Source of the DNA: Asterias rubens
Lineage: Eukaryota
Reading direction: 5' to 3'
DNA length: 63,788 nt
Assembly (NCBI RefSeq): GCF_902459465.1
Contig: NW_022985739.1
Coordinates: 1-63,788, forward strand
Position numbers and translations under genes: made by a program
Shown: positions 10,840 through 41,480 of the stretch, one piece after another
How positions within the stretch are numbered: the first letter of the stretch is position 1
How the letters are laid out: each line of letters opens with the position of its first letter
Notes under the pieces: generated by a model
The model's database searches: none
What the model saw: only the letters and a program-made list of their open reading frames with translations
What the model was told of the DNA's origin: nothing

Positions 10840-11048
10840 ACTACTTCCGCTTTGATGATGATTCATACCAAAATAGGTGAAATAAGTAGCTTCTGCATCT
10901 GAATTGGTCACTACTTCGCCTCGTTCTGCACGAGCTGCCAATTCAAAAATTCGTGGTGAGATGGATGTCAGGCCGAACTCTCCGTTCCCATTAAAAGTGT
11001 ACTGCAAATTATCAAAGGTTGTATAGTGCGGGTCACCTACACACCATG
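10840..11048 (-). CDS. Exon: VWD start with GDPH motif
   Basis: ttttctgctttccAG / GTaagt; 209 bp, phase 1 to 0; AWCVGDPHYTTFDNLQYTFNGNGEFGLTSISPRIFELAARAERGEVVTNSDAEATYFTYFGMNHHQSGSS. Confidence 0.92.
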
Positions 11049-11684
11049 CTGGAAAGCAGAAAAAAAAAATCAAAAATTAAAAGATGCAAACATTTTTTTT
11101 AAATGAGGCAACCCTAATTATAAAAAGAAAATGGCACTCCCAGTTCAATAATGTAAATTTTGGGTTGCATAATTTGGCAGACATTGCTGACAATCGTAGT
11201 GTACATTTATGAGGTTTAAGTTTTTTCAGTTCCAAAATTGATTTAGATGTATACCGATTTTAGTTATGTTTCACTGCTAAGCTGCATACATGTACAGTAT
11301 GAGCTTGTGTGAAACGACACTCGGCATGATTACCAGGGTCCGGGGCGATGCATGCACAAACCATGAATTTTCTTTTCTCCGTGCACAAACTACACGTCAT
11401 CAGCCCAGTGGAGAAAAGTTATCCATCGAAATGATGTCAGCGGCACAAATTGAAAACTAGTTATATTGCATTTAGGGGGACATGTCCCCCCAACTTTTGG
11501 AGGGTTTGTCCCCCATGTTTTTGACAAGCTCAACTACACTGTGTCCCGCTATGGGCATCAATCCTGGGAGAAACATATGGCACCACTTTCTATAGGGTGG
11601 GGCACACTTTATCAAATATCCCCCTATACAAAATTGGCCCAAGATTGCACCACAGAGCATCTACCCCACGCCGTAAAGCTTAAC

Positions 11685-14460
11685 ACCCGAATGCTGTACA
11701 CTTTACCGATTCGTGGCATCATCCTGAAATTTAATTTGAATTAAATGACGACACTCAGCTATACATCACATATAAATCTTCTCAAGAAAACGCCAATGCA
11801 TCTATTGCAAGCATTCAAGAGATTCGACGTTGGACACAACAAAACTTCCTGAAGTTAAATGATGATAAGACAGAGTTCCTTCTATTTGGGTCACGTCAAC
11901 AGTTAACAAAGGTTTCAGTGCCAGACATTTCCATCAGTGATGCTCGGATAGCTCCCTCGCTGAAATCTCGGAACTTAGGGATTATTTTGATTCATCGATG
12001 ACACTTCAGCCACACATCAACAACATTGTTCGTCTATCATCATATCACATCAGGAATATAGGTAAGATTCTCAAGTACTTGGACAAAAGTGCCACGTAAA
12101 AGGTCATTCATGCATTTGTTACTTCTCGTCTTGACAACGGCAATGCTCTTAGCTCTACAGTCTTCCAAACAACCAGATTTACTGACTTCAACGGCTCCAA
12201 AAAAACTGCTGCCCGCATTGTGACACTGTCTAGAAAATCCTGTTCTATCACCCCCATTCTAAAACAACTACACTGGCTCCCTATCTCTCAACGAATCATC
12301 TTCAAGCTGATGCTCATTGTCCACAAAGCTCTTAATGGCAAGGCTCCCCACTATATTTCTGAACTGCTTCAAGTTTACACTCCATCAAGGAATCTTCGAT
12401 CAAATTCCATGCTTCTTCCCATTGAACCCAAGTCTCGACACACATTGGTGTATCAGGTGTCGAAAAACAACTTGCATCTCTAAATCCGACCAAAGCGTGC
12501 GAGCCAGATGAGCTACCACCTAGGCTGTTGAAAACTGTTGCACACAAACTTGCACCTTCTCTCCACCCAGGCTGTTGAAAACTGTTGCACACAAACTTGC
12601 ACCTTCTCTAACATTTTTGTTCCAACAATCAAACAACCTTGGCATTGTCCCCTCCCAATGGAAACAAACTCTTGTAACTGGTATCTACAAGAAGGGACCT
12701 AAATCACAACCATGCAACTATCGCCCAATTTCTCTTACCTGTATCTGCAGCAAGGTTATGGAACATATAATTCTCAGCCACGTCGCAAAACACATAAACA
12801 TGAACAACATCCTCATCGACTCTCAGCATGGTTTCGAGAACGCCTATCCACTGTTAGGCAACTTATCACATCCACTCATGACTGGGCTTCTACACATACA
12901 CATCGTGGCCAGACCGATGTCATACTACTTGATTTCAGCAAGGCGTTCGACAAAGTTCCACATCTACGATTGTCTGTCAAGCTTGATCACTATGGTATCA
13001 GAGGCTCTACACTAGATTGGATTCTTTCGTTTCTAGACAATCGGATCCAGGCTGTATCTGTGAATGGAACCCACTCATCATGGGGGAGGGTTTCATCTGG
13101 AGTACCCCAAGGCTTAGTCCTAGGTCCGGCTTTGTTTCTACTATATATTAACGACATTCAAGACCAGGTCCAGTCAAAGATGAGATTATTTGCTGATGAT
13201 AGCATCCTCTACCGTGAAATAGAGCAACCAGAAGATCATTCAATTCTCCAGAAAGATCTCGAGGCACTTGCTGATTGGTCATCCACCTGGTTAATGCATT
13301 TCAACATAAAGAAACTGTGCCATTCTGTCAATAACCAAGGGAAAACCCTCACAACACCAGTACATCATTTTTGGTGAAGCACTTGAAAGGGTGAGTCAGC
13401 ATGATTACCTTGGAGTAGCTATCTCACACGATCTCCGCTGGGATGCCCACTGCCAGAAGATCAGACAGAAGGCCAACCGCACATTAGGACTGCTCCGTCG
13501 CACACTTTCACCATGACATCAAGGTGTCAAGGCAAAAGCCTACCAAACGCTCGTCCGCCCACAACTTGAGTATGCTGCCCAGGTATGGAACCCATACACC
13601 CTGGATGGAGTCAACCGCCTAGAGCAGGTTCAAAGAGCTGCAGCTTGCTTTGTCTTTGGTGATTACCGCAGAACAACATCGGTCACGCCCCTTATTACTA
13701 CCTTGGGCTGGGATCCACTTCATAACAGACGACTACTTTTCCAAACGACAATGTTCCATAAAATCCATCATGGACTTGTCAATATCCAGTTTCCATCAAT
13801 TATCCAACCAGCACATTACATTGGACGTCATGACCACCCATTGAAATATACAATTCCTGAAGCATCCATTGATCTATACAAGTTCTCCTTTATCCACGCA
13901 CCGTGAAGATTTGGAACCAGTTGCCCACAGCTGCTGTCCTGGCTACATCACCCACCGCCTTCCAGGAAGCCGCCCTGCCTGCCATTAAAGTGATGAGGCT
14001 ACCGGTTGGTTCCAAGCTCCTCTAATTCTCCTAGTCAAGCTTTTTAACCTGCACCCAAGTTTTTTGTTGGATTTTGTCAACTTCTTGTGATTTTGTCTGC
14101 ACTTTGTCTATTTTCTTTCTTCACTTGCACCTTACAGCTGTGACGCCACGCTGCACCCATCCCAGTTAAGCCAAATTTGTGCTGCAAAGGGATCACACTA
14201 CTCAAGACTCAAGACAGCTCTTTTCTTCAGCTGCGCCCACATCTGGAACTCTCTACCACTTAATCTTCGATCTTGTCTTTGTACGACAAAATTCAAATCT
14301 CTTCTCAAAACTTATCTTATATCACAGGTTTTCAAGGACTAATTTTTGTTGTGTCTGTTTGTCTTTGTTTTGTTTTTGGTTTTACTGCGCCTTGAACACC
14401 CAGCAGGGTGAATATGTGCGCATTACAAGCCTTAATTGTTATTATTATTATTATTAATAA
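11685..14460 (+). mobile_element. 5'-truncated L2 LINE with (ATT)n tail, split by a second LINE (duplicate about 29090-31865)
   Basis: DDTQLY, NFLKLNDDKTEFLLFG, LHWLPISQRIIFK, then after the insertion SSAAP..WNSLP..KSLLKTYL and an ATT tail at 14435-14460. Confidence 0.85.
12451..14213 (+). mobile_element. 5'-truncated RTE-X/CR1-like LINE nested in the L2 (duplicate about 29856-31618)
   Basis: NYRPISLTCICSKVMEHII, LLDFSKAFDKVPH, GVPQG, FADD, frameshifted; ends with tcaagactcaagac; 47-bp internal tandem duplication near 12517-12610. Confidence 0.85.
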
Positions 14461-15912
14461 ATTACCAATAGCAAAAACAAATGGTGCATCAAAACTTGAA
14501 AAAGGCCTTAAATTCCAACTTCTGAAAGGTAGGCACATCATCCCTCAGAATCCCTAGATTGCACCAGAGAGCATCTATGACCTTAAATTTTCCCTGACCT
14601 CCACGCCGTAAATGTTTCGACTTCTGATGTGTCCCCCCCCCCTTTCAAGACAGATTGACGCCCATGACTCAAATAATATGTAAGATACAATTATTGTCTA
14701 CATTATTTGGGGATTTGAAAAAAGTGCAAAAATTGTTATCTTCAATGGTTGATGGCAGGATTGTTTTGGTGAAAAAAAGTATATTGATCATCTGTGACAC
14801 CAAAGTTTCTGGAGTAAAATCATCTTTAAATATTAAAATCAATCAACTGTTTTGTGGTTTTGTTTCCCAAGCAAGATTTTATGTGAAGAACTTGATTCAT
14901 TATATTTTTATTCTTCCCACTTGACAAGTACTTGACTAAAAGCTGTGAATAATTGAAGGGATAATCAGATACAGCAAAGTATGGGGATTACATTTTGAGG
15001 CTAGATTGACCTCATACAAACATGTATGTAATGTTCCCATAAATCTACAGGCTTATGTAACCTCATGCATAAGTCAAGTATAGGGTGGTGTTACCTGTTT
15101 GTCAAATGCATGATCAACTTTGAAAAAGAATATGAAGCTACAACTATAAAGACTGTGTGATTGAAATTGACACATACTTAGACACAGCTTTGTCATCTCA
15201 CAACGTTTTGAATATATTCAATCTGACCCACACCTCATGTGCAAAATTAATGACACCTCATGTGCAAAATGTAGTTCAAAGATGTCATTATTGTACTAGA
15301 GTTTGTGGGAAATATGTACATTTTCATTTGCATAGCTTTTATTAACAGCATCAGCTTCACTCTTCATTTCTATCATGCATTGTCAAACGTACCTAAGTAT
15401 TCATTACTTCCTGTCCATGTACAATGTACATGGATGTCTTACAATATGTTTGTGTTCTTTGTTCTTTTTTTTTAATAATAGGCGGGAAAAAGTATTTGAA
15501 GTGTTTATACGCAGAATCAAATAAGTCACAGCCTCTGAAAACTGTTATATTGACAAAAAGGAGCTTTGGATACACCTGATCATCAGTTGGGCGTCCACAC
15601 TGTGGTCCACAAACCCAACAAATTTGGTCAGCATGGCTTCTTTTCAATGTACAGGTGACCAGCATTACTGTACACTTGGCATAGCGTGCTTCTTTTGAAG
15701 TGGCACACCTGGCATCTTCTAAAGGTACAGGTGACACCACCATTAATGGGCAATGAAGCCCATTCATTATTTGGCACACCGTGCATCTTTTCCTTTTGGG
15801 TACACTCACACCAACCATTCTTCGGCACCAAGCCCAAATTATTTAATTAGCAAATGACAAACATCTGTGTGTACACCTGAACCATAATATAGGCACACAG
15901 ATGGGATGCAAT

Positions 15913-16215
15913 GTGTCATGGCCGAGCGGTTAAGAGTACCGGATTCAAGCCCTGGTGTTTGATCAGCAGGGTGTGGGTTCCAATCCCGGTCGTCACACAT
16001 ATGCTATATAAAATTGGGGAGGTAGTGCTTTCTGCTCTACCGGCCAGGCTTCGGACTGAGGATACCCAAGCCTACATCCGTATGGACTGTAAAAGGGGTC
16101 CCTGTTTCAGCCCTAGGAGTAGGTGGCAACCGCCTCTGGACAAAAATAATTGTAGCCCACACCTTGAAGTAGCCTTCAGGCCTTGTGTGTCTGGCGACTT
16201 GCATAGAAAAAAAAT
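15913..16215 (+). mobile_element. tRNA-derived SINE (duplicate about 33326-33630)
   Basis: GTGTCATGGCCGAGCGGTTAAG A-box, GGTTCCAATCC B-box, A-rich end. Confidence 0.7.
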
Positions 16216-16368
16216 GAAACAATTATTGGAACTAGTCATATACCGACAATGAGGTTAACCCCTCAAACAATTAAGTTGTGCAATTCCACCTTGGCACATG
16301 TAATCAGAACTGGCCCCTGTGGTAACCTCAAAGTGCTATAACACATTTTATTGTTACAATATTAGATC

Positions 16369-16640
16369 TTAAAGGCAGTGGACACTATTGGTAATACTCA
16401 AAGTAATTATTAGCATAAAACCTTACTTGGTAACCGTAATGAAGAGTATAAATGATTGTGAGAAACGGCTTCCTCTGAAGTAAAACAGTTTTTGAGAAAG
16501 AAGCAACTTCTCACTAAAATATTTTACTTTGATTTTGAGACCTTAGAATTAGAATTTTAGGTCTCGAAATCAAGCATCTGAAAGCACACAACTTGTGCAA
16601 CAAGGGCGTTAATTCTTCCATTATTCTCTCGCAATGACTG
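16369..16640. mobile_element. Truncated TTAA-type MITE, same family as 42812-43197 (further fragment at 3045-3186)
   Basis: Begins TTAAAGGCAGTGGACACTATTGGTAAT and follows the reverse complement of the 43 kb copy. Confidence 0.75.
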
Positions 16641-16702
16641 GAAATGTTTATAAACAAAACTTCAACAACTTTCAGTAAAACACATTAAACAAATCTACTC
16701 AC

Positions 16703-16822
16703 CTAGAGTTGGTGGCATGTATGTGCTACAAGACTTCTTCGGTCGTTTAATTTCATACCTTTCACAAAACTGTTGACTATAAGATGCAACGCAGCAGTAG
16801 TACCTTGGCGAAACCTCTTTTT
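16703..16822 (-). CDS. Exon (left copy): AMOP C-terminal part
   Basis: Duplicate of 34117-34236; 120 bp, phase 1 to 1, canonical AG/GT. Confidence 0.9.
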   Translation of the reverse strand, partial: KKRFRQGTTAALHLIVNSFVKGMKLNDRRSLVAHTCHQL

Positions 16823-17039
16823 CTAAACAAAAATAAGCAAGAAAAACAAATTCATTAAGAGCAATTCAGTGACTAAAAATACTAGAAATACAAACCCTTC
16901 AAAAAGAGTATAACATTATGGTTTTTAATTTTCAATGTGTTAACTTGTGTTTGAGTGCTCTATCATTGAGTACATGTTCAAGTCCATGTCCTCGGTAATG
17001 TCCTGCATCCAACTACTTGAACTGAATCCAAGTTGTAAC

Positions 17040-17975
17040 TCTAGCGAGAAAGAAAACCAAATCTCGGTCATATGAAGTGATGACCAAAACTGGCAAAATG
17101 AACCAAAGAAATCGCAGAGATCTCTGCAGCACCAAGTGGATTACAGTCCAATCAACCCGATCATTGACACCAATGTATCAAAGAAGGAAACAACCATTAA
17201 AGCGAATATAGAACTATTACAAGACGCAGGACAACCAGAACCTTTGGTCACAACAAGTTTAGGACGCACAGTGAAACAACCCTCACATCTCATTGACTTT
17301 GTAACCTACTTAAAGATACAGACTTGAGAAAAGAACAAATGTCAGAAAGTAGATTTGAAAGGCTATGTGAGACACATCATTATTTTGAAAACTGAACCCA
17401 TGGAGCTACAATATTCTATTGAATGAAAAATATTTGAATTCAATCTTCTCTACAGAATCGTTTATTTCTTGATTGGAGGAAAGATGTGATCTTGTCTAGC
17501 TACTAGGAGCAAGTTCGATCAACGACCATAGTTAACCATAGTTCGACTAACTCTGATCGAACCCGCATTAGTCAACGATAGTTAAACCCGTGTAGTCGAC
17601 TATTCGCGACCATCCACTCGAGGCTGGTCGAGCTTGGTCGCATCGTTGGTTACCAATAGCAATTTGTCATATCACAGTGTGCTGCAGGCAGAGAGGACCA
17701 GTTATTCTTAAAATAGCTGAAAAGAAGTGAGTATGGACTTTTTATGTGTTCAGGCATAGAGCTATGGTTCACGGTCATCTTTTTCTCACACGGTCGCTAG
17801 AAAACGACTAGAGTCAGTCGCACGCTTATTTCAGCGTGCATGCGCTTCGTACGTCACGAACTAACCACTAGTCGACGATTGTACTCTGATCGAACTTGCT
17901 CTAGTTCCAGATTACCACAGTCTTCATATATGTTATTATTGTTACTTGCACACTGGTGGAGTTTATGACAATACG
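17040..17975 (+). mobile_element. 3' remnant of a Gypsy-like LTR retrotransposon (integrase tail, PPT, start of 3' LTR)
   Basis: TTSLGRTVKQPSHLIDFV resembles the T.SGR.VK.P.RL.D integrase tail; polypurine GGAGGAAAGA directly followed by TGTG at 17485. Confidence 0.55.
17507..17901. mobile_element. 395-bp MITE with 15-bp TIRs and 3-bp TAG TSD (duplicate 34922-35316)
   Basis: TAG-GAGCAAGTTCGATCA ... TGATCGAACTTGCTC-TAG; a 3-bp TSD suggests PIF/Harbinger. Confidence 0.85.
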
Positions 17976-17979
17976 ATTT

Positions 17980-19765
17980 GATTAGATTATTAGATTATAG
18001 ATTATAATTCTTTATTGTCCGCATAACATATACAGATAATTGTTTTCCATTGGCAATTGGAGACATTAAAAAATTATTATTATTATTATTATAATAAACA
18101 TGTTCATAAAACCGAACAATAAAATGTAAAGCACAATACAAACCACGAAAAAATTGTTTATTGCTAAAATTACAGCGAATGATTGGAATAGATTACTGAC
18201 AATACTTACAAGTTACTTTAAAATTATACAAAACATTTGTGGTACAGTTAAAAAATAAGTAATTACCGTTTGACTAAAGAATTAAAAAGATGAATTGAAT
18301 TGGGAACAAAGGATTGTCGAAAACGAAGTGATTTTGTTTGTGGTGGATGGAGTCTAATACCAGAGCGATTAAAAACAAAGCAATTAAAAAGTGGGTGGGT
18401 CGGGTCCTTCATTGCTGTACTTAACTTGGCAACCATTTTTGTTTCAAATTCTATATCCAAGGATGGCAAGATTAAACCTATGATCCGCTGAGCATTTTTC
18501 TTTACCCTGTCAAATTTCTTCTTACTCTGCTGTGAAAGTAAACCGTATGTACATATTAAGTTAAAAGTTAAAACACTCTGTATCAAGGACTGATAAAATA
18601 AACGCAAGATAGATCGGTCTACATGAAATTTCTTCAGTTTTCTCAAAAAGTACAAACGTTGGTTAGCTTTACTGTATATCGTTTCAGTATTCCTATTCCA
18701 GTTCAGTTGATCATCCACTACAGTTCCAAGATACTTATATTCATTGACTCTTTCTACAATGCAGTTATTGATAGTGAGAGGGTCATGTGTCTCAGCACCT
18801 CGTCGAAAATCAAAAATCATCTCCTTAGTTTTCTGTACATTTATTGAGAGATAGTGACGATTACACCAGTCAATAAAATTCATGACCTCTGTTACATACT
18901 CGGTAGAGTCATTTTTCAAGTACCCAGTAATTACCGTGTCATCTGCATATTTAATGATGCTGCAATTTGAGCTGGAACATAAACAGTCACTGGTATATAA
19001 CAAAAATAACAAAGGAGAGATGACACATCCTTGAGGAACACCAGTATTGATATATTTTACATCAGAACAAACACCTCCTACTTTGACCCACTGTGGCCTA
19101 TCTCTTAAAAATCCATGTATCCATCGCACAATTTGGGGTGAGATATTCATTTGTAATAATTTCTGCGCAAGGATATGAGGTTGTATTGTGTTAAAAGCAC
19201 TGGAGAAATCAATAAACAGAGACCTGACGTATGTTCAGGGTGAGTCCAGGTGATTGTAAAGTTTGTGAAGATAGACAAGCACTGCATCGTCAACTCCCCT
19301 ACTTTGCCTGTATGCAAATTGAAGATTATCAAGAAATGGGCTAGCCTGGCTAGTGAGAAACCTTGTGATCAATCTTTCCAAGCATTTCATGATATTGGAT
19401 GTTAATGCAATCGGACGATAATCATTTAACACAGTAGCCTTCTTTTGCTTTGGCACTGGGACTATCATTGACATTTTCCAATTTTTGGGGATAGAACCTT
19501 CATCTAATGTCATTTGAAAAATTGATGTGAGTACATTGGCAAGTTGATGGCTACATGACTTTAAAATTCTGTTACTAATACCATCAGGTCCAACAGCTTT
19601 ATTTAACTTCAGACCTGAGAAGACATTCCTAACATCAGCTTCATTAACGGTAACATTGTCAGTTAGTGAAACATTTGCTAATGTCTCTGCAGTAAAATCG
19701 CGAATATCAAATCTACAGTAAAAATTGTTCAGTTCATCTGTGAAGTCCTTGATAACCCAGATAAT
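17980..19765 (-). mobile_element. 5'-truncated Rex1/Babar-type LINE RT (duplicate about 35395-37181)
   Basis: DYRPIALTS, FAYRQSRGVDDAV, LFIDFSSAFNTIQP, GVPQG, KYADD; 3' end caataaag followed by an (aatct)-like tail. Confidence 0.9.
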
Positions 19766-19859
19766 ATTTCCATGTGAGTTATTTCTATTGTTGATAGTAT
19801 TTACATTATAAACCACAAGGGAAACTGATTGGGTACATTTTATAAATGATTTTGGGTTG

Positions 19860-19925
19860 AACAAAGAAAAATTGACTAAGCGAGTGGGACTCGAACCAAC
19901 GACCTCCAGATTAACTTGGCAGTTC
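19860..19925 (-). mobile_element. tRNA-derived repeat fragment (B-box half only)
   Basis: Minus strand GGAGGTCGTTGGTTCGAGTCCCACTC; no 5' half, so not an intact tRNA. Confidence 0.5.
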
Positions 19926-20488
19926 CCTCTTTGTCAATATCTCTGTTGTCAATATCTTTGTTTGGGGTGCCAGTCAGAAACAAATACAACCGTTAACTGC
20001 CGTGTATCAAACCCAAATTATGATACAACCTGGGAAGGGGCAGCCAGGGGATATACATGTAGTCAGAGGCAAATACTATTACAAGGTCAATCATTCAAAG
20101 TGGTATGAAAACCTTTAAATATATAACTGTAAGAAGGCTTACGTTTCAAAAGTCAACCTCTTTTCTTTTTTTATTGTTAAACAATCTGCATGTTAACACA
20201 GAGACCATTGGTGATTGTCCTTGGAAGCCCGTATGTAACGTAAATGATGAGTTTAATACAATAATGAGGGTAATAACTTTATTAAATTTCCAGATCACAT
20301 TATTAGATTGTGTTTAATACTACTGACACCAGATTTCAAAGAAAGGGAATACTATCTTCCTGCTTGAATTGTTGAAGCAATGCATTCTTGCTGCCAGATT
20401 ATCAAAATTAAGATACTTTGTCAATTTGTTTGAATAAATTGCATCAAATTGTCACAGTTTGTAATACGTGTAGAACATTTTTACTTAC

Positions 20489-20674
20489 CAATCCAAGTGT
20501 TATATCTGTCCTGTAAAGTACCACTGCCAGAGGTAAAGAATGGGTTGAATGAAAAGCGCTCAGAAACAGCCCCAAAGAAAACGTCATTTGGAAACTGCAT
20601 TAATGCTTCCAAATTGTCATAGCAACATAGTAATCCTGGCGAATCACTTGCCAAGAATGTACGATAATAGCAAT
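20489..20674 (-). CDS. Exon (left copy): AMOP middle
   Basis: Duplicate of 37905-38090; 186 bp, phase 1 to 1, canonical AG/GT. Confidence 0.9.
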
Positions 20675-20979
20675 CTGTAGTGTAATAAGGAGAAAAGCAA
20701 TGTACATGTTATATAATACACTTTACTTACAATGTACCTCAATTTCAAACCATGGGCACGATTTGTATAAAACAAAAGGCTCACAGAATTCTTTTAATTA
20801 AGGGTTCTCCACTCAAAAACTTTTCTCTTAATTTATATCAACTTGCAGAAATAAAATTACATTATTGTTTTACACTTATTTAATTCTAGCATTGTTACTC
20901 CCCAATGAAAAAGTTGCTAATAACACACAAAAAACATGCTTCTTTAAGCTAAGTTTGTAAGTTTATCAGCTACTCATAC

Positions 20980-21445
20980 CTTTTGGTAATAAGGGCCAAC
21001 TAAAGGAAACAGCTTCATCAATACCCAGATCAGTCAAATTTAACAACTCGTATCTACTATCAAGCATAGCTTGATTGTGACTACATGGACAGTCATCAGT
21101 AGGCATCCAAGTTGATGGGTCTGGCTGAACAGCTTGCCATTGGTTACATTCTTGTTCAGGATTGACATAGGTATCTGAGTTGGAATCCAATCTGTATGCC
21201 CAGATACCTAACTGGTTAGTGTTACCAAGATACATGTCTGGTCTCTTATGGATGTCAATTGAGTCTTGTGGATCAGGATCATTGATGTACGTGCTTTCTC
21301 CATTAGGGCATTTGTATCCAATCACAACATCTTGAAATGGAAGCACATTAAAGTCCCAAAGCATGTGCCCAACTTCATATTGGAATATAGTGTATCCCTG
21401 GCGACCATTAGTTGCAACAGTTGCTTGAAACGTATTGGTCAAGTT
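20980..21445 (-). CDS. Exon (left copy): NIDO C-terminal part plus AMOP start
   Basis: Duplicate of 38396-38861; the ORF track gives identical 200-aa translations for both; 466 bp, phase 0 to 1. Confidence 0.9.
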
Positions 21446-21947
21446 CTGCAAATTGAAAAGAAATTCAAGTCCTTTTATATTATAAAAATAACAGTGATGC
21501 TCACCAAACTGTGTTCTTGTACCCGAGCGCTGAACCTTGACATTGATCTGTTGACTTGAACTCACCACCTTTACCTAGACCTTCAACCTTTAAATAATAA
21601 ACAATCTCAAACTTTTCCCCAAGGGAAATCCCACCCAGTATACAAGACAAGTGCAAATGGCACTTCTAACTGGAGTTCTGATACTGAAACCATTAGGCTA
21701 CAACTCACCATCATGACCTACCTCTAACCTTTTCACCTCCAAAACAACCCAAACTTTCTTTTCCCAAAGGGCAAATCCTTTGTCTGAAGTGCTCAGTACT
21801 GCTGGCTACTGTGATCCATGTACAATGTACATAATATCAGGTTTGGCAATGCCAGCAAGGGCATTGTATTTTAATGTGCAAATCTAGAAAGTGATTTTCA
21901 TGCTGGGCATGATGAATAAAGAAATGAATTGAATTGAATTGAATTGA

Positions 21948-22790
21948 AGCTGGTATTGTCTGTTTGTTTTAGGCAGCCAGTGATGGATCTGCAACTGTTG
22001 TTGAGAGCATGGTCAACTATCTTTGCATGATAAGGACCTTTCCCAGACGGGCCATCCAGGCATACTCTGCAGCAGAGTGGCAAAGAGCGTGGATACATTG
22101 GCACCCCATGATGAGTTTGTAAGTTGTTTCTGGTTCTCACTTCACCTTTTACCTTGTTTATATAGACCGTATCGAACCATTCAAAAACCTGCCCTACAAC
22201 ATGGCGTGCTTGAGCGTGTGTGTGTAAACGCTTCGGCTGCGTGCTTCATTGATGTACGCGTTTAGACGCGCATACGGTTTGCCCCACAACGGTTTGCCCT
22301 GGCGACTTTCATAGCAACAAGGGGTTATTCAATACGGCCTATATGCTGCTTGTACAAGAGCGTCTGGTCCAGGGTGACACCGAGGTATACCGGGAAGATG
22401 CAGTGGACACCATTCCACATCGGGGGACAATTTCTTCCTAGCGTCACCATGTAAGTGTAACAGGATTACCTGGGTCTCGGTAGGATTTGCCTCGAGTTGG
22501 TTGACTGTGTAATAGGTTGTGAGGCTGTCTAGGGCTGATGTGAGGGTGGCCTCAATGTTATTCCAGATGGTGCTCCGGGCTGCAATCCCAAGGTCAGCAT
22601 ACATGAAACTTCTTGCCCTTGGTTGGTCATATTGGTGTAGATGTTGAATAGCACAGGAGCAAGGACCATTCCTTGGGGCAGGCCATTCCTTTGTTTCCTC
22701 CATCTGCTGCACTTTCCATTTGGTTTAATACATAGCGCCTGTTTTCTAGTAGCTGGTGTACCAATTTGGTGCGGTGAAAGTCATTTGTCA
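21948..22790 (-). mobile_element. Vingi/Ingi-like LINE RT fragment with internal interruption (duplicate about 39362-40207)
   Basis: RNGLPQGMVLAPVLFNIYTN, RSFMYAD, NQLEANPTETQV, HAKIVDHALNNSCRSITGCLK; clade assignment from memory of the motifs. Confidence 0.7.
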
Positions 22791-23300
22791 TTTTGGCTAC
22801 ATGGATGACAATGAGGCAAAGTCACGAATCAAATGTGCCAAAATGACCATTATCTGTGCTAAATGGTCAATTGATAAGGAAATAAAAGGGTAGCGACGAG
22901 TTCTTACACGGCCGTTTAAAGCCGGCAGTGTCGAATTGCCGTGTATATATAGATTACGCACGCGCGCTTAGAAGTATATTACGCGATGTTACTAATAGCT
23001 ATGAATTGCGTTCCGCGTGATAATTTTGCGCGCCTGACACGCAGAAGCCAGCAGGTTATAAAAACCTTTCATTACCAACCGTTTAAACACCCCACGTGAC
23101 GCGCTCTCCACCAACAGGAGTAGATAAACTGTCTGGGGTATTTATGAATAATGATTTATTAACAAACTGATCAAGCTTCAGAACCATCAATGGTTTACAC
23201 ACAGATTTGTACCAGTAAGCACACAACACACAATTAACCCTCATCTCTTGAAAAAACCCTTGTTTGGGTATTTGCAAGACTGGGTTAAACAATGACTCCA

Positions 23301-23580
23301 GGTGGGTTCGAATCCTTGTGGTGACACTTGTGTCCTTGAGCAAGACACTTGACCATAAGCTTCTCTCCAGCCAGGGGTAAATGGGTACCTGTGAGGGCAG
23401 AGTTGGTTCTTGTGATTGATTAGCTTTAGTGTGCTACATGCAGCACAGGCTGTACACTCCCCAGGGAGCTGAGATGGTTTAAGGAATGATTTAAGGCCCA
23501 GTGGCAGGGGTAATAACGTTGAAGCGCCATGAGCGTCACTGCGTCATGAACCTGACCGCTATATTAGAAGCCACTATTAT
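23301..23580 (+). mobile_element. 5'-truncated SINE, same family as 47903-48260; tail is the insertion site of the 1.6 kb array (duplicate 40879-41170)
   Basis: GGTTCGAATCC, GTCCTTGAGCAAGACACTT, CCAGGGGTAAATGGGTACC core and (ATT)n tail. Confidence 0.8.
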
Positions 23581-26500
23581 CTCTGCCCGTGCAACGGCAG
23601 AGATATTGTCCTTGTGGTGGATATTCTTCTTATCTCTGCCCGTGCAACGGCAGAGATATTGTCCTTGTGGTGGATATTCTTCTTCTTCTTCTTCTTCTCC
23701 TTCTTCAGCTTGCATTTGCAAAACCGTGGCCACATATTGGGCTTGGGCTTAGGCTCCGTCAGTTATTTAGAAAACATGTGCTTTTCTAACGGGGCTTCAA
23801 ACAGGCAGACGAAGCCCAAGCCGAAGCCCAAGTGACATCCCAAGCTAAAGCCGCGGTTTCGTAAAAAACGGAACCAAAAATTCCAACCTCGTACCTAAAG
23901 CTTGTAAGCCGATCAGAATTGCAACGTAAAAATATAACGAGGTTGTTTTATTTACGTGATGAGTGAATCCTCTACGCTGCGCTGCGAGACGATCACCACC
24001 GAAGCTTTTCCCCACGTTATTGCAATGGGGGATTTTCCGGTCGCAGTGTGACCTGCACCGTGAACGTTAAAAACACTCTGCCGTGGTCTGGAGCTTATTC
24101 ACGGCATACGGGTTCGGTGAAAACCCGGAGAGCCAACGGATGTTAACCGTGCTAACCGTGTATGGTTGTTAGTTACATGAGCTTTAGTTTGAGTGAGGAA
24201 ACTTCGCAATCGTCACCGTTAATCCATAAGTCAATAGTCATTCAATAACGGAGCATTTTTATAGAAAAATTGTTTTAAATTAGCTTATTAGCTTTTACAA
24301 ATTATTCTTTTCACAGTGCATCTTAAGAAAAGGTTTTGAATGTTTTTGGAATTTATGTGAGATTCATTACCTTGCCAAATGTCTTTGCAATGAAATATGT
24401 TGTAAAACAACTGCATGATACTGTTGGTAACAGTACCAAACTTAAGTGTTTCTTAGTAAAAGTTGGACACTTGATATTAATAGTGTTATCACTTGTCCAT
24501 GTAATAATAGGCAGCTGACTTTTACCTAATCAAAAAGGCACGGTGGCCCAAAAGGACATCGCATAACTGTAAACTTGTCGGCATACGTATGCCGTGAAAA
24601 TATTTGGGAATATGTGCGCATGCTTACGTATGCGCTTGCGTATGGTGGGATTTCGTTAAGATATTCGCGAGTAACGTATGCGAATATGTTTGAGTTGTCG
24701 AAAATTTTATTATACTTTGTCGCATATGTTTAATTAAAATTTCTAATATATATCTGTGGATTTTTAGCATCCAGTCTGATCGCGACATCATACTTATTCG
24801 CGAATAATTTCTTGACACCGCATACGTATGCGCAAACATTTGCGAATAAATTTGTGACATCGCAAACGTATGCAATCAAAAAGGTACGGTGGCCCAAAAG
24901 CACATCGCATAACTGTAAACTTGTCGGCATACGTACATGTATGTCGTGAAAATATTTGGGAATATGTGCGCATGCTTACGTATGCGCTTGCGTATGGTCG
25001 GATTTCGTATTCGCGAGTAACGTATGCGAATATTGTTCTGTATCACCCCCAAAACACACACAATTTTCATTTCTCCAAGTGCAACATAAACCATGCAGAA
25101 TATTATGCTCCACCCCCCGCCGGGCAGAGATACCCGTATTTGCTCAAATACAGCTACCGTGCTTTCTAGTTATCTCTGCCCGTGCAACGGCAGAGATATT
25201 GTCCTTGTGGTGGATATTCTTCTTATCTCTGCCCGTGCAACGGCAGAGATATTGTCCTTGTGGTGGATATTCTTCTTCTTCTTCTTCTTCTTCTTCTTCT
25301 CCTTCTCCTTCTTCTTCAGCTTGCATTTGCAAAACCGTGGCCACATATTGGGCTTGGGCTTAGGCTCCGTCAGTTATTTAGAAAACATGTGCTTTTCTAA
25401 CGGGGCTTCAAACAGGCAGACGAAGCCCAAGCCGAAGCCCAAGTGACATCCCAAGCTAAAGCCGCGGTTTCGTAAAAAACGGAACCAAAAATTCCAACCT
25501 CGTACCTAAAGCTTGTAAGCCGATCAGAATTGCAACGTAAAAATATAACGAGGTTGTTTTATTTACGTGATGAGTGACTCCTCTACGCTGCGCTGCGAGA
25601 CGATCACCACCGAAGCTTTTCCCCACGTTATTGCAATGGGGGATTTTCCGGTCGCAGTGTGACCTGCACCGTGAACGTTAAAAACACTCTGCCGTGGTCT
25701 GGAGCTTATTCACGGCATACGGGTTCGGTGAAAACCCGGAGAGCCAACGGATGTTAACCGTGCTAACCGTGTATGGTTGTTAGTTACATGAGCTTTAGTT
25801 TGAGTGAGGAAACTTCGCAATCGTCACCGTTAATCCATAAGTCAATAGTCATTCAATAACGGAGCATTTTTATAGAAAAATTGTTTTAAATTAGCTTATT
25901 AGCTTTTACAAATTATTCTTTTCACAGTGCATCTTAAGAAAAGGTTTTGAATGTTTTTGGAATTTATGTGAGATTCATTACCTTGCCAAATGTCTTTGCA
26001 ATGAAATATGTTGTAACACAACTGCATGATACTGTTGGTAACAGTACCAAACTTAAGTGTTTCTTAGTAAAAGTTGGACACTTGATATTAATAGTGTTAT
26101 CACTTGTCCATGTAATAATAGGCAGCTGACTTTTACCTAATCAAAAAGGTACGGTGGCCCAAAAGGACATCGCATAACTGTAAACTTGTCGGCATACGTA
26201 TGCCGTGAAAATATTTGGGAATATGTGCGCATGCTTACGTATGCGCTTGCGTATGGTGGGATTTCGTTAAGATATTCGCGAGTAACGTATGCGAATATGT
26301 TTGAGTTGTCGAAAATTTTATTATACTTTGTCGCATATGTTTAATTAAAATTTCTAATATATATCTGTGGATTTTTAGCATCCAGTCTGATCGTGACATC
26401 ATACTTATTCGCGAATAATTTCTTGACACCGCATACGTATGCGCAAACATTTGCGAATAAATTTGTGACATCGCAAACGTATGCAATCAAAAAGGTACGG

Positions 26501-27928
26501 TGGCCCAAAAGCACATCGCATAACTGTAAACTTGTCGGCATACGTACATGTATGTCGTGAAAATATTTGGGAATATGTGCGCATGCTTACGTATGCGCTT
26601 GCGTATGGTCGGATTTCGTATTCGCGAGTAACGTATGCGAATATTGTTCTGTATCACCCCCAAAACACACACAATTTTCATTTCTCCAAGTGCAACATAA
26701 ACCATGCAGAATATTATGCTCCACCCCCCGCCGGGCAGAGATACCCGTATTTGCTCAAATACAGCTACCGTGCTTTCTAGTTCTTCTTCTTCTTCTCCTT
26801 CTTCTTCTTCTTCAGCTTGCATTTGCAAAACCGTGGCCACATATTGGGCTTGGGCTTAGGCTCCGTCAGTTATTTAGAAAACATGTGCTTTTCTAACGGG
26901 GCTTCAAACAGGCAGACGAAGCCCAAGCCGAAGCCCAAGTGACATCCCAAGCTAAAGCCGCGGTTTCGTAAAAAACGGAACCAAAAATTCCAACCTCGTA
27001 CCTAAAGCTTGTAAGCCGATCAGAATTGCAACGTAAAAATATAACGAGGTTGTTTTATTTACGTGATGAGTGAATCCTCTACGCTGCGCTGCGAGACGAT
27101 CACCACCGAAGCTTTTCCCCACGTTATTGCAATGGGGGATTTTCCGGTCGCAGTGTGACCTGCACCGTGAACGTTAAAAACACTCTGCCGTGGTCTGGAG
27201 CTTATTCACGGCATACGGGTTCGGTGAAAACCCTGAGAGCCAACGGATGTTAAGTGTGCTAACCGTGTATGGTTGTTAGTTACATGAGCTTTAGTTTGAG
27301 TGAGGAAACTTCGCAATCGTCACCGTTAATCCATAAGTCAATAGTCATTCAATAACGGAGCATTTTTATAGAAAAATTGTTTTAAATTAGCTTATTAGCT
27401 TTTACAAATTATTCTTTTCACAGTGCATCTTAAGAAAAGGTTTTGAATGTTTTTGGAATTTATGTGAGATTCATTACCTTGCCAAATGTCTTTGCAATGA
27501 AATATGTTGTAAAACAACTGCATGATACTGTTGGTAACAGTACCAAACTTAAGTGTTTCTTAGTAAAAGTTGGACACTTGATATTAATAGTGTTATCACT
27601 TGTCCATGTAATAATAGGCAGCTGACTTTTACCTAATCAAAAAGGTACGGTGACCCAAAAGGACATCGCATAACTGTAAACTTGTCGGCATACGTATGCC
27701 GTGAAAATATTTGGGAATATGTGCGCATGCTTACGTATGCGCTTGCGTATGGTGGGATTTCGTTAAGATATTCGCGAGTAACGTATGCGAATATGTTTGA
27801 GTTGTCGAAAATTTTATTATACTTTGTCGCATATGTTTAATTAAAATTTCTAATATATATCTGTGGATTTTTAGCATCCAGTCTGATCGCGACATCATAC
27901 TTATTCGCGAATAATTTCTTGACACCGC
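23578..27928 (+). mobile_element. Head-to-tail array of a ~1.6 kb non-autonomous Helentron/HINE-like element (2 full units plus 1 cut by the gap)
   Basis: Units 23578-25170, 25171-26781, 26782-gap. 5' TATCTCTGCCC with hairpin, (CTT)n, internal direct repeats, 3' inverted GGGCAGAGATA (25122, 26733), GTATTTG-ct-CAAATAC stem-loop, end CTAGT. Confidence 0.75.
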
Positions 27929-28428
27929 NNNNNNNNNNNNNNNNNNNNNNNNNNNNNNNNNNNNNNNNNNNNNNNNNNNNNNNNNNNNNNNNNNNNNNNN
28001 NNNNNNNNNNNNNNNNNNNNNNNNNNNNNNNNNNNNNNNNNNNNNNNNNNNNNNNNNNNNNNNNNNNNNNNNNNNNNNNNNNNNNNNNNNNNNNNNNNNN
28101 NNNNNNNNNNNNNNNNNNNNNNNNNNNNNNNNNNNNNNNNNNNNNNNNNNNNNNNNNNNNNNNNNNNNNNNNNNNNNNNNNNNNNNNNNNNNNNNNNNNN
28201 NNNNNNNNNNNNNNNNNNNNNNNNNNNNNNNNNNNNNNNNNNNNNNNNNNNNNNNNNNNNNNNNNNNNNNNNNNNNNNNNNNNNNNNNNNNNNNNNNNNN
28301 NNNNNNNNNNNNNNNNNNNNNNNNNNNNNNNNNNNNNNNNNNNNNNNNNNNNNNNNNNNNNNNNNNNNNNNNNNNNNNNNNNNNNNNNNNNNNNNNNNNN
28401 NNNNNNNNNNNNNNNNNNNNNNNNNNNN
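27929..28428. other. Assembly gap (500 N)
   Basis: Run of exactly 500 N; a round number suggests a scaffolding placeholder. Confidence 0.99.
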
Positions 28429-28453
28429 TAGTGCGGGTCACCTACACACCATG
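28429..28453 (-). CDS. First 25 bp of the VWD-start exon (right copy), cut off by the assembly gap
   Basis: Same acceptor and sequence as 11024-11048 (AWCVGDPH) and runs directly into the N run. Confidence 0.75.
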
Positions 28454-34116: not shown

Positions 34117-34236
34117 CTAGAGTTGGTGGCATGTATGTGCTACAAGACTTCTTCGGTCGTTTAATTTCATACCTTTCACAAAACTGTTGACTATAAGATG
34201 CAACGCAGCAGTAGTACCTTGGCGAAACCTCTTTTT
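34117..34236 (-). CDS. Exon (right copy): AMOP C-terminal part (not in ORF track)
   Basis: tttgtttAG / GTgagt; 120 bp, phase 1 to 1; EKEVSPRYYCCVASYSQQFCERYEIKRPKKSCSTYMPPTL (P...CC....C..Y...RP...C..Y.PP). Confidence 0.9.
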   Translation of the reverse strand, partial: KKRFRQGTTAALHLIVNSFVKGMKLNDRRSLVAHTCHQL

Positions 34237-37200: not shown

Positions 37201-37904
37201 CTATTGTTGATAGTATTTACATTATAAACCACAAGGGAAACTGACTGGGTACATTTTATAAATGATTTTGGGTTGAACAAAGAAAAATTGACTAAGCGAG
37301 TGGGACTCGAACCAACGACCTCCAGATTAACTTGGCAGTTCCCTCTTTGTCAATATCTCTGTTGTCAATATCTTTGTTTGGGGTGCCAGTCAGAAACAAA
37401 TACAACCGTTAACTGCCGTGTATCAAACCCAAATTATGATACAACCTGGGAAGGGGCAGCCAGGGGATATACATGTAGTCAGAGGCAAATACTATTACAA
37501 GGTCAATCATTCAAAGTGGTATGAAAACCTTTAAATATATAACTGTAAGAAGGCTTACGTTTCAAAAGTCAACCTCTTTTCTTTTTTTATTGTTAAACAA
37601 TCTGCATGTTAACACAGAGACCATTGGTGATTGTCCTTGGAAGCCCGTATGTAACGTAAATGATGAGTTTAATACAATAATGAGGGTAATAACTTTATTA
37701 AATTTCCAGATCACATTATTAGATTGTGTTTAATACTACTGACACCAGATTTCAAAGAAAGGGAATACTATCTTCCTGCTTGAATTGTTGAAGCAATGCA
37801 TTCTTGCTGCCAGATTATCAAAATTAAGATACTTTGTCAATTTGTTTGAATAAATTGCATCAAATTGTCACAGTTTGTAATACGTGTAGAACATTTTTAC
37901 TTAC

Positions 37905-40868: not shown

Positions 40869-41174
40869 AATGACTCCAGGTGGGTTCGAATCCTTGTGGT
40901 GACACTTGTGTCCTTGAGCAAGACACTTGACCATAAGCTTCTCTCCAGCCAGGGGTAAATGGGTACCTGTGAGGGCAGAGTTGGTTCTTGTGATTGATTA
41001 GCTTAGTGTGCTACATGCAGCACAGGCTGTACACTCCCCAGGGAGCTGAGATGGTTTAAGGAATGATTTAAGGCCCAGTGGCAGGGGTAATAACGTTGAA
41101 GCGCCATGAGCGTCACTGCGTCATGAACCTGACCGCTATATTAGAAGCCACTATTATTATTATTATTATTAACA

Positions 41175-41480
41175 TCCTCCATGGAACTTAGGATGAATCA
41201 CGCTTTTGTTTGCGCGATTTGGATGGTCGGGTTAAAGCTTGGAGAAGACCTGGGTAGCGGTATGCTTATTGTTGCATTGATAGTCACATCATTTGGAGGT
41301 GGAAGCGTGATGGTGTGGGGAGGCATATCCATGTTTGGGAAAATAAGACTTGTGGTGTTCGCTGGAAACCTGAACGGTACCAAGTACAGAGACGATATCC
41401 TACATGTCCTACAGCTGATAGCAGTCCCATACCTGCAGACTCTTGGACCCAAATTTTTGACTCCCATAAATGGCCGACCG
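41175..41480 (+). pseudogene. Tc1-like transposase fragment
   Basis: FGGGSVMVWGGIS..G...LVVF.GNLNG.KY.D.IL..AVPYLQ is the standard Tc1 DDE-domain motif. Confidence 0.8.

What the first reader, a model, noticed from the sequence alone, without database searches (positions are those of the whole stretch)
23578..27928. Head-to-tail array of a 1.6 kb element with full Helentron/HINE terminal architecture
Seen: each unit starts TATCTCTGCCC folded into a 10-bp hairpin (TATCTCTGCC-cgtgcaac-GGCAGAGATA), then (CTT)n and an internal ~150-bp direct repeat (24528 and 24874). It ends with the inverted motif GGGCAGAGATA, a GTATTTG-ct-CAAATAC stem-loop and CTAGT, joined with no spacer or TSD to the next unit (CTAGT|TATCTC at 25170/25171). 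Established: asymmetric sub-terminal inverted repeats, a 3' stem-loop, an internal microsatellite and T-rich targets define non-autonomous Helentrons (HINE/DINE-1 type), which can form tandem arrays by rolling-circle read-through. Inference: a young rolling-circle family caught seeding a satellite inside a gene intron. I do not recognise it as a named family, but cannot confirm novelty.
Basis: partly seen in the sequence, partly recalled or inferred. Interest (0 to 1): 0.72.

Follow-up and report, generated by a model that had tools for sequence, protein, structure and literature searches.

The report
Self-nesting Helentron element pile-up
This is a very young non-coding rolling-circle jumping element (a Helentron derivative) whose tandem-looking clusters seem to be built by new copies landing again and again in the short TTC repeat at the front of copies already there, not by runaway copying, which shows one concrete way a jumping gene can start a satellite-like repeat.

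Summary
The repeat is real. Window 23578-27928 holds two complete units (1593 and 1611 bp) and a third that lacks the 5' hairpin and is cut by a 500-N gap.

The HINE reading is well supported:
- It has an 11-nt subterminal inverted repeat, a 5' hairpin, a (TTC)n tract, internal 346-bp repeats and a 3' stem-loop 19 nt from the end.
- It inserts after a T (T also follows at 34 of 42 loci) with no target duplication.
- It shares its 5' 1478 bp and 3' 139 bp with a ~19.8 kb element at C2:141054-160865. That element encodes Rep, a PIF1 helicase and an APE-type endonuclease.

The proposed mechanism, rolling-circle read-through, is not supported:
- Of about 85 internal junctions genome-wide, only 9-10 are 3'-end|5'-end. 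About 62 are 3'-end|(TTC)n with no hairpin.
- Orphan hairpin stubs, spaced 47+3k nt, pile up at the 5' edge of arrays. All four dimers read HHEE (H = hairpin, E = 3' end), never HEHE.
- In two arrays a hairpin split after nt 29 resumes after the inner copies.
- Units in one array are no more alike than units on different chromosomes.

The arrays therefore look like nested, same-strand self-insertions at T^T. Unequal exchange has enlarged the largest ones.

This scan has noted other Helentron and HINE families on other pieces of this genome.

The parts
23578..25170 (+). Unit 1: two 53-bp 5' hairpin units, (TTC)n, body, 3' end CTAGT (1593 bp)
25171..26781 (+). Unit 2: two 5' hairpin units, a longer (TTC)n, body, 3' end (1611 bp). 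It joins unit 1 with no spacer.
26782..27928 (+). Unit 3: starts directly in (TTC)n with no 5' hairpin. It is read here as the remainder of an outer copy interrupted by the inner ones. The assembly gap cuts it.
23578..23605 (+). 5' subterminal repeat TATCTCTGCCC with its inverted partner, forming a 10-bp hairpin. Further copies lie at 23631-23658, 25171-25198 and 25224-25251.
   Evidence: DNA fold -10 kcal/mol, z = -4.4
23677..23706 (+). (TTC)n tract between hairpin and body, also at 25270-25317 and 26781-26813. Its T^T steps are the preferred landing site of new copies.
24528..25036 (+). Internal direct repeat, two copies of about 160 bp at 346-bp spacing. The same repeat lies at 26139-26647 in unit 2, and its first copy starts at 27635 in unit 3.
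   Evidence: (D4, D5, D7)
25122..25170 (+). 3' module: inverted subterminal repeat GGGCAGAGATA (25122-25132), stem-loop GTATTTG-ct-CAAATAC (25136-25151) and a 19-nt tail ending CTAGT. The same module lies at 26733-26781.
27929..28428 (.). Assembly gap of 500 N that hides the 3' end of the array. It was not filled.
11024..23577 (+). Block A, the 5' flank of the array. It is 99.5% identical to block A' at 28429-41154.
41100..41175 (+). Empty site in block A'. The same flank ...gccactat runs straight on into TATTATTATTATTATTAACATCC, so the array sits between T and T of a (TAT)n tract with no target duplication visible on the 5' side.

Best explanation
The 1.6 kb unit is a non-coding internal-deletion derivative (HINE) of a ~19.8 kb Helentron that still looks capable of activity.

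- The unit keeps the first 1478 bp and the last 139 bp of the autonomous element. It would be mobilised in trans by that element's Rep / PIF1-helicase / APE-endonuclease protein (inferred).
- Integration is strand-specific. It occurs between two T's of T-rich sequence and makes no target duplication (shown).
- Each copy carries a (TTC)n tract just behind its own 5' hairpin, plus a second good target (T^TGTCCTTGTG) inside the hairpin unit. Resident copies are therefore preferred landing sites.
- A new copy lands in the same orientation inside the 5' region of an older copy. This leaves the older copy's hairpin as a 47+3k-nt stub upstream and its hairpin-less body downstream.
- Repeating this gives a Russian-doll structure that looks like a head-to-tail array (shown from junctions, split hairpins and haplotypes).
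- Copies with several stubs seem to be re-mobilised from the outermost hairpin to the first 3' end (inferred).
- The largest arrays have been enlarged further by unequal exchange of multi-unit blocks (inferred from ~9.6 kb periodicity).
- In the window, at least three separate insertions of three different haplotypes went into the (TAT)n tail of a short interspersed repeat.
For: Identity as a HINE:
- The termini and architecture are as described.
- Solo copies L005, L009, L011, L012 and L015 have sharp ends.
- Insertions into (ATT)n at C13:9924617-9926174 and into (TTGTTA)n at C11:5195439-5197394 stay in phase, with no bases gained or lost.
- The window has an empty site at 41154/41155.
- All but 3 of about 50 unique 5' flanks end in T, and 34 of 42 unique 3' flanks start with T.
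- The two best Helitron_like_N hits in the genome lie between family termini, at C2:149256 and C6:9938656.
- The C2 element shares the unit's 5' 1478 bp and 3' 139 bp. It encodes DUF6570 + Helitron_like_N (E 1e-36) and PIF1 + Exo_endo_phos.

Nested self-insertion:
- Among 127 3' ends, about 62 are followed by (TTC)n with no hairpin. Another 20 are followed by (TCT)k + hairpin, with k = 0, 1, 2, 3, 4 in 9, 4, 4, 2 and 1 cases. Three are followed by TGTCCTTGTGG, the second half of a hairpin unit.
- 58 hairpin units are followed by (TCT)k, k = 0-5, and then another hairpin.
- Writing each array as tokens (H = hairpin unit, E = 3' end) gives: C12, C19, C22, C23 = HHEE; C1:12.5 Mb and C21 = HHHEEE; C10 = HHEHEE; C1:0.9 Mb = HHHEHHEEEE.
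- H and E counts in other arrays are C1:2.6 Mb 20/19, C13 9/8, C16 7/6, with running sums never negative. The genome-wide totals are 132 H and 130 E.
- In the C5 array a hairpin is cut after nt 29. Three inner bodies with their 3' ends (and four inner hairpin units) follow, and then the rest of that hairpin with its own body, 3' end and unique flank. The array starting at C1:12503218 shows the same pattern at its 12506855 junction.
- All nested units share one orientation, as expected because only the T-rich strand offers T^T.
- Within-array divergence is 4.37 differences per 800 bp against 3.91 between arrays (permutation p = 0.84). Only 9 of 44 array units have their nearest relative in the same array. 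Window units 1-3 match haplotypes on C1/C2/C5/C6/C8/C11, on C13/C3/C6 and on C21/C22 respectively.
Against: - Several arrays are not balanced: C2 5 H/2 E, C8 9/4, C11 6/3, C3 2/3. The 52 kb array at C6:14341491-14393326 has 11 H and 27 E. Extra processes are therefore needed, namely re-mobilisation of multi-hairpin 5' ends, unequal exchange, or assembly collapse.
- Slippage of the 53-bp unit could add some of the stubs.
- One split-hairpin stub (C11) and one remainder (C6) have no partner in their array.
- No transposition was observed. The Rep and helicase ORFs of the best copy are in different frames, which may reflect an intron or a frameshift.
- The window's own array has one true 3'-end|5'-end junction, and its 3' end is hidden in a gap.
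- Most token strings were read from coordinates in pattern-search output. Further genome sequence could not be fetched.
Confidence: 0.75

Rival explanations
1. This is the first reader's model of rolling-circle read-through or concatemer formation. The transposase fails to stop at the 3' end, or a circular intermediate is replicated for several rounds, and a multimer is inserted.
For: - Helitron-type elements use a rolling-circle or circle-intermediate mechanism, and tandem Helitron arrays have been attributed to it (Xiong et al. 2016 and Pritham & Feschotte 2007, as cited in PMC12628747 and PMC7492417).
- The junction at 25170/25171 is a precise 3'-end|5'-end join. Another 8-9 such joins exist elsewhere.
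Against: - Only 9-10 of about 85 internal junctions are of this type.
- The model does not explain hairpin-less bodies, stub piles with variable (TCT)k, or split hairpins that resume after inner copies.
- Neighbouring units are no more alike than units on other chromosomes. Window units 1 and 2 differ in haplotype and in (TTC)n length.
Confidence: 0.08
2. This is an ordinary satellite-type expansion. A single tandem dimer arose once per locus and was amplified by unequal crossing-over or replication slippage. Under this reading the 5' hairpin unit is merely an unstable 53-bp minisatellite.
For: - The C6:14.34-14.39 Mb array repeats a pattern of unit lengths about every 9.6 kb. The C1:2.60-2.64 Mb array repeats a pattern about 21 kb apart.
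- The series of (TCT)k values 3,1,2,0 occurs in two different hairpin piles of the C1:2.6 Mb array.
- Several arrays have unequal H and E counts.
Against: - It does not create CTAGT|(TTC)n junctions or split hairpins.
- It predicts that units within an array are each other's closest relatives, which is not seen.
- k values differ between arrays, so the arrays arose independently.
- It is accepted here only as a secondary process in the largest arrays.
Confidence: 0.12
3. This is an assembly artefact. Under this reading the arrays are mis-joined or collapsed copies of dispersed elements.
For: - The window scaffold is suspect. Blocks 11024-23577 and 28429-41154 are 99.5% identical and are joined across the gap at the end of the array.
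- Short contigs of the likely source sample leave the array 3 nt after the flank. None of the listed contigs bridges into it.
Against: - Nineteen loci on 15 large contigs, plus this window, show the same grammar with different details.
- Several are short (3.4-6.5 kb), have unique flanks on both sides and contain no gaps.
- Misassembly would not produce complementary split-hairpin halves.
Confidence: 0.04

Closest known systems
HINE / DINE-1 non-autonomous Helentrons (Thomas, Vadnagara & Pritham 2014, PMC4067079)
   Same: - A 5' subterminal repeat with an adjacent inverted partner.
- A microsatellite and central tandem repeats.
- A 3' subterminal repeat 38 nt from the end and a palindrome 19 nt from the end. 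The published ranges are 38-60 nt and 8-35 nt.
- Insertion at T/TT with no target duplication.
- An autonomous partner encoding Rep-helicase-endonuclease with shared ends.
   Different: - It is a different sequence family in a different host. Earlier notes of this scan call the host a starfish.
- The 5' repeat starts at the very first base.
- The unit is long (1.6 kb) and is a plain deletion derivative of its partner.
- 19 of about 44 occupied loci hold nested multi-copy clusters.
Cg_HINE elements carrying satellite-like repeats in the Pacific oyster (PMC7492417; review PMC12628747)
   Same: - The same module order: subTIR, IR and microsatellite on the left; central repeats; subTIR and palindrome on the right.
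- The elements are linked to the birth of tandem repeats.
- Loci with truncated or tandemised elements inserted into one another are reported there too.
   Different: - In the oyster it is the internal 170-bp repeats that expand. Here the whole element is what piles up.
- The junctions here can be read base by base as insertions into the element's own microsatellite.
Rolling-circle amplification of Helitrons into tandem arrays (Xiong, Dooner & Du 2016, as summarised in PMC12628747)
   Same: Tandem-looking arrays of Helitron-superfamily elements, with several 5' ends stacked before the 3' ends.
   Different: - That model gives truncated copies of a single template, typically many 5' ends and one 3' end.
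- Here the numbers of 5' and 3' ends roughly match, the inner copies are complete, the haplotypes are mixed, and interrupted copies resume after the inserts.
Double-insertion model for transposon dimers and satellites (McGurk & Barbash 2018, PMC5932611)
   Same: Strong insertion-site preference makes tandem dimers during bursts of transposition. Unequal exchange can then expand them.
   Different: - That model was described for elements that duplicate their target, with the duplication sitting in the junction. Helitrons are not mentioned in that paper.
- Here there is no duplication, and the preferred target is carried inside the element. The result is therefore nesting, not side-by-side insertion.

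Membership tests
Helentron (autonomous partner) | A protein with a Rep (HUH) domain, a PIF1-type helicase and a C-terminal APE-type endonuclease | tested here: met
   - In the C2:141054-160865 element, ORF1 (1468 aa) carries Helitron_like_N (E 1.2e-36) with an HIH motif at residue 951.
- ORF2 (742 aa) carries PIF1 (E 1.4e-25) and Exo_endo_phos (E 3.9e-6, over the cut-off).
- The two ORFs are in different frames in every copy.
HINE / DINE-1 type non-autonomous Helentron | Subterminal inverted repeats of 11-15 nt, the 3' one tens of nt from the end | tested here: met
   TATCTCTGCCC at the 5' end pairs with GGGCAGAGATA 38 nt from the 3' end.
HINE / DINE-1 type non-autonomous Helentron | A short palindrome close to the 3' end | tested here: met
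   GTATTTG-ct-CAAATAC lies 19 nt from the end. It is present in the minimum-energy fold but is not unusually stable. It is invariant in 130 copies.
HINE / DINE-1 type non-autonomous Helentron | An inverted repeat next to the 5' subTIR, a microsatellite and central repeats | tested here: met
   Hairpin with z = -4.4, (TTC)n and 346-bp-period internal repeats.
HINE / DINE-1 type non-autonomous Helentron | Insertion at T/TT in T-rich DNA without target-site duplication | tested here: met
   - There are two in-phase microsatellite insertions and one empty site.
- All but 3 of about 50 unique 5' flanks end in T. T follows the 3' end in 34 of 42 unique flanks.
HINE / DINE-1 type non-autonomous Helentron | No coding capacity, and ends shared with an autonomous Helentron | tested here: met
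   - The unit aligns to the first 1478 bp and last 139 bp of the C2 element.
- The C2 element's ORF1 starts about 5.9 kb in.
- Further autonomous-length copies lie at C6:9.90-9.95 Mb and C11:7.45-7.47 Mb.
Rolling-circle concatemer array | Uniform 3'-end|5'-end junctions and near-identical neighbouring units derived from one template | tested here: not met
   - Only 9-10 of about 85 junctions are of that type.
- Within-array divergence is not lower than between-array divergence.
Named family in Repbase/Dfam | Sequence match to a curated consensus | not testable with these tools
   No repeat library is available. A paper search for Helentron together with starfish or echinoderm terms listed nothing relevant among its top 12.

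The most novel reading that the evidence does not exclude
The microsatellite that HINE and DINE-1 elements carry behind their 5' hairpin is not a passive passenger. It acts as a built-in landing pad.

- The Helentron integration machinery homes, strand-specifically, to T^T steps next to a resident 5' hairpin.
- A family can therefore turn itself into proto-satellite arrays by serial self-nesting.
- If this is general, it would explain why HINE families are so often found at the origin of satellite DNAs in insects, molluscs and echinoderms.
Probability: 0.4. Interest if true: 0.65.

Novelty: new variant of a known kind. Interest (0 to 1): 0.5.

Why it matters
How mobile elements turn into tandem satellites is an old question. 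For Helitron-type elements the usual answer is aberrant rolling-circle replication. This family is young enough (about 0.5% divergence) that every junction can still be read.

The junctions point to a different route. The element carries its own preferred target, so copies nest into one another in a single orientation, and unequal exchange takes over afterwards.

The family also offers:
- an autonomous copy with long open reading frames and many deletion derivatives, suitable for testing Helentron target choice;
- a possible role for the unexplained 5' microsatellite of HINE and DINE-1 elements;
- a probable presence/absence difference at the window's own locus.

Tried and rejected
- I first read the letters TAGT just after the gap (28429) as the last bases of the array. 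Self-comparison showed they are simply the start of a 99.5% copy of 11024-23577, so I dropped that reading.
- I tried to fetch all 19 arrays and about 20 solo loci for a full sequence-level parse. Token strings for most arrays therefore come from the coordinates and matched strings of pattern searches. Only the C5, C21, C3, C2, C6:9.9 Mb, C11 (its 3' end beyond 7468999 not fetched) and window arrays were parsed from sequence.
- A strict 'one hairpin per 3' end' rule fails for C2, C8, C11, C3 and C6:14.3 Mb. I kept the model but added re-mobilisation of multi-hairpin ends and unequal exchange.
- Laying public contigs on the 5' junction gave only short unitigs. These cannot separate a heterozygous insertion from a true duplication.
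- ARAGORN found no tRNA-like head in the flanking short repeat.
- A simple search for a double-tyrosine Rep motif within 170 aa after the HIH motif found nothing. I did not follow this up.
- Paper searches found no description of this family or of Helentron self-nesting.
Full report
**1. What is in the window**

Positions 23578-27928 hold three copies of one element.
- Unit 1 is 23578-25170 (1593 bp) and unit 2 is 25171-26781 (1611 bp).
- Unit 3 starts at 26782 and runs into a 500-N gap at 27929.
- Units 1 and 2 each begin with two tandem copies of a 53-bp unit.
- That unit is TATCTCTGCC-cgtgcaac-GGCAGAGATA, then TTGTCCTTGTGGTGGATAT, then two TCT triplets.
- The hairpin is strong as single-stranded DNA (-10 kcal/mol, z = -4.4).
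- After it come (TTC)n, a body with two ~160-bp direct repeats at 346-bp spacing, and the 3' module.
- The 3' module is the inverted motif GGGCAGAGATA (25122-25132), a 7-bp stem-loop (25136-25151) and a 19-nt tail ending in CTAGT.
- The next junction, 26781/26782, is CTAGT|TCTTCTTC.
- Pairwise identity of the units is 99.3-99.5%.

**2. The window scaffold**

- Self-comparison shows 11024-23577 and 28429-41154 are 99.5% identical over 12.5 kb. The layout is block A, the array, the gap, then block A'.
- After the shared flank '...gccactat', block A' continues with TATTATTATTATTATTAACATCC.
- This is an empty site. The array sits between T and T of the (TAT)n tail of a very abundant short interspersed repeat (1902 first-look candidates). 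No duplication is visible on the side that can be read.
- I could not decide whether A and A' are two alleles joined by scaffolding or a true duplication. An allelic join seems likely on a 64 kb unplaced scaffold. It would make the array a heterozygous insertion.
- Public runs are held only as short contigs. Flank contigs of the probable source sample diverge 3 nt into the array, which fits the empty form. None of the listed contigs bridges into the array.
- The gap was not filled.

**3. Family census**

- The genome (417.6 Mb, 150 contigs) has 130 matches to the 3' module and 132 to the 5' hairpin, against none for the reversed controls. Earlier notes of this scan call it a starfish genome. 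I did not verify that.
- There are about 25 solo loci and 19 multi-copy loci.
- Solo copies have sharp ends.
- The copy at C13:9924617-9926174 interrupts (ATT)n exactly in phase. The copy at C11:5195439-5197394 interrupts (TTGTTA)n in phase. There is no duplication and no loss at either site.
- All but three of about 50 unique 5' flanks end in T, and 34 of 42 unique 3' flanks begin with T.
- By hand tally, 18 of 42 3' flanks have TGT at +7 to +9 and 5 more have it one base later. About 0.8 would be expected by chance.
- Several primary sites are T-rich microsatellites: (TTA)n, (TTC)n, (TTGTTA)n and (TTATTC)n.

**4. Autonomous partner**

- The two best Helitron_like_N hits in the genome lie between family termini.
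- The element at C2:141054-160865 (19.8 kb) starts with four hairpin units. It shares the unit's first 1478 bp and last 139 bp at 98.6-100% identity.
- It carries ORF1 (1468 aa: DUF6570, then Helitron_like_N with an HIH motif) and ORF2 (742 aa: PIF1 helicase, then Exo_endo_phos).
- Rep plus helicase plus APE-type endonuclease is the Helentron signature (PMC4067079).
- Further copies lie at C6:9.90-9.95 Mb (two, head to tail across a gap) and at C11:7.45-7.47 Mb. The second C6 copy and the C11 copy have several frame breaks.
- The unit is therefore a plain deletion derivative, a HINE. All published structural criteria are met (see the membership table; PMC4067079, PMC7492417).

**5. How the arrays are built**

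If arrays were read-through products or concatemers, junctions should read CTAGT|TATCTC and neighbouring units should be near-identical. Four lines of evidence go against this.

Junction types:
- About 62 internal junctions are CTAGT|(TTC)n-body.
- 20 are CTAGT-(TCT)k-hairpin, with k = 0 in only 9.
- 3 are CTAGT|TGTCCTTGTGG.
- Upstream, 58 hairpin units are followed by (TCT)k, k = 0-5, and another hairpin. This gives spacings of 47, 50, ... 62 nt.
- In (TTC)n the only T^T step recurs every 3 nt, which explains the fixed phase of both junction types.

Token strings, writing H for a hairpin unit and E for a 3' end:
- All four dimers read HHEE, never HEHE.
- The trimers read HHHEEE (twice) and HHEHEE.
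- C1:0.9 Mb reads HHHEHHEEEE.
- C1:2.6 Mb has 20 H and 19 E, C13 has 9 and 8, and C16 has 7 and 6. Running sums never go negative.
- This is the grammar of insertions nested in the interval between hairpin and body.

Split hairpins:
- In the C5 array the first hairpin is cut after nt 29.
- Three inner bodies with their 3' ends, and four inner hairpin units, follow.
- Then, after CTAGT and a 7-nt repeat of the end, the missing TGTCCTTGTGGTGGATAT resumes with its own (TTC)n, body, 3' end and unique flank.
- The array starting at C1:12503218 shows the same cut and a precise resumption at 12506855.
- That cut site fits the target tally above (T^T, TGT at +7 to +9).

Relatedness of units:
- I compared 49 body segments of 800 bp.
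- Units within an array differ at 4.37 sites on average, against 3.91 between arrays (permutation p = 0.84).
- Only 9 of 44 array units have their nearest relative in the same array.
- The three window units carry three haplotypes, each shared with other chromosomes.

Every nested unit also has the orientation of its host. This is expected if integration uses only the T-rich strand.

**6. What the model does not cover**

- Five arrays are unbalanced: C2 5/2, C8 9/4, C11 6/3, C3 2/3 and C6:14.3 Mb 11/27.
- Hairpin excess is expected if a nested copy is re-mobilised from its outermost hairpin to the first 3' end.
  - The solo copy at C14 and the C2 autonomous copy carry 2 and 4 hairpins.
  - The k series 3,1,2,0 occurs in two piles of the C1:2.6 Mb array, and the series 0,1 occurs in both C5 and C21.
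- The 3'-end excess in the 52 kb C6 array goes with a ~9.6 kb periodicity of unit lengths. The 40 kb C1 array has a ~21 kb periodicity. These point to later unequal exchange, or to assembly problems.
- This matches the two-step scheme of McGurk & Barbash (PMC5932611): insertion preference makes the seed and exchange expands it. The difference is that this element carries its target with it and makes no duplication.

**7. Strength of the homing**

- About 234 anchored (TTC)6 tracts exist in the genome. More than half of the first 100 listed belong to this family.
- Four or five host (TTC)n tracts are occupied.
- By contrast, 19 of about 44 element-bearing loci have taken at least one further copy.
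- Hairpin-adjacent tracts are thus hit roughly ten times more often or more. This suggests recognition of the resident 5' end, or local reinsertion, on top of plain microsatellite preference. This step is inference.

**8. Reading of the window array**

- One parse is as follows. An outer copy consists of the hairpin at 23578 and the body from 26782. It was entered after two TCT triplets by a one-hairpin copy (23631-25170). It was entered again at the T^T just after that copy's CTAGT by a two-hairpin copy (25171-26781).
- An equally valid parse takes unit 1 as a two-hairpin copy, followed by a nested dimer.
- Either way there were at least three insertion events. The outer body's last ~350-460 bp and 3' end lie in the gap.

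**9. Context, novelty and verdict**

- Neighbouring ORFs are reverse-transcriptase fragments and a NIDO-domain ORF at 20966-21568 on the minus strand. The 'intron' claim remains untested.
- Other Helentron and HINE families have been noted elsewhere in this genome by this scan.
- I found no paper describing this family or Helentron self-nesting. Repbase and Dfam could not be searched.
- Verdict:
  - It is a genuine, very young HINE with its autonomous Helentron.
  - The 'array' is mainly a nest of independent self-insertions, not a rolling-circle product.
  - It is a known kind of element with an informative, apparently undescribed behaviour.

Noticed in passing
window 11024-23577 and 28429-41154: The two blocks are 12.5 kb long and 99.5% identical. 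They sit on either side of the array and the 500-N gap on a 64 kb unplaced scaffold. Either two alleles were scaffolded in series (one with the array, one without) or this is a real tandem duplication.
   Followed up: partly
window 23290-23577 and 40870-41170: An abundant short interspersed repeat (1902 first-look candidates, copies 86-90% alike) ends in a (TAT)n tail. ARAGORN finds no tRNA-like part. The array is inserted in its tail.
   Followed up: partly
3' flanks of 42 loci, e.g. C6:9902704, C1:2604866, C5:1631520: There is a downstream target motif. Besides T at +1, TGT occurs at +7 to +9 in 18 of 42 flanks and at +8 to +10 in 5 more. This suggests sequence-specific target recognition at a fixed distance from the cut. 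The count is a hand tally and was not modelled.
   Followed up: partly
G000 C6:14341491-14393326 and C1:2604866-2644321: These are very large clusters (at least 27 and 19 units). Unit-length patterns repeat about every 9.6 kb and 21 kb. This is either higher-order repeat structure typical of unequal exchange or an assembly duplication. The 5' edge of the C6 cluster was not seen.
   Followed up: no
G000 C15:12.46-14.00 Mb, C92:15560, C24:828192: Nine further Helitron_like_N hits, seven of them clustered in 1.5 Mb of C15, are not flanked by this family's termini. They probably belong to other Helitron or Helentron families.
   Followed up: no
L042 4444-4507 (C2:151343-151406): The Rep ORF and the helicase/endonuclease ORF overlap by 64 nt in different frames. 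The frame change at this point is seen in every copy compared. It could be an intron, a programmed frameshift or a shared defect.
   Followed up: partly
window 20966-21568 (-) and 38382-38984 (-); 35679-36929 (-), 12712-13377 (+): A 200-aa ORF with a NIDO domain lies 2 kb upstream of the array and may be a host exon. Reverse-transcriptase ORFs of retroelements are also present. One is open in block A' (416 aa) but split in block A.
   Followed up: partly
C5:811060-811067; C8:18216555-18216560; C19:4547479-4547485: Short repeats of the element's last 5-7 nt (TTCTAGT, CTAGT or TCTAGT) follow some 3' ends directly. They may be footprints of imprecise termination or integration.
   Followed up: no
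runs X2, X3 (marine metagenomes), window 23714-24300: Contigs of about 910-920 nt from two marine metagenome runs match the element body with no differences. DNA of this animal, or a very close relative, carrying the same family is therefore present in those samples.
   Followed up: no
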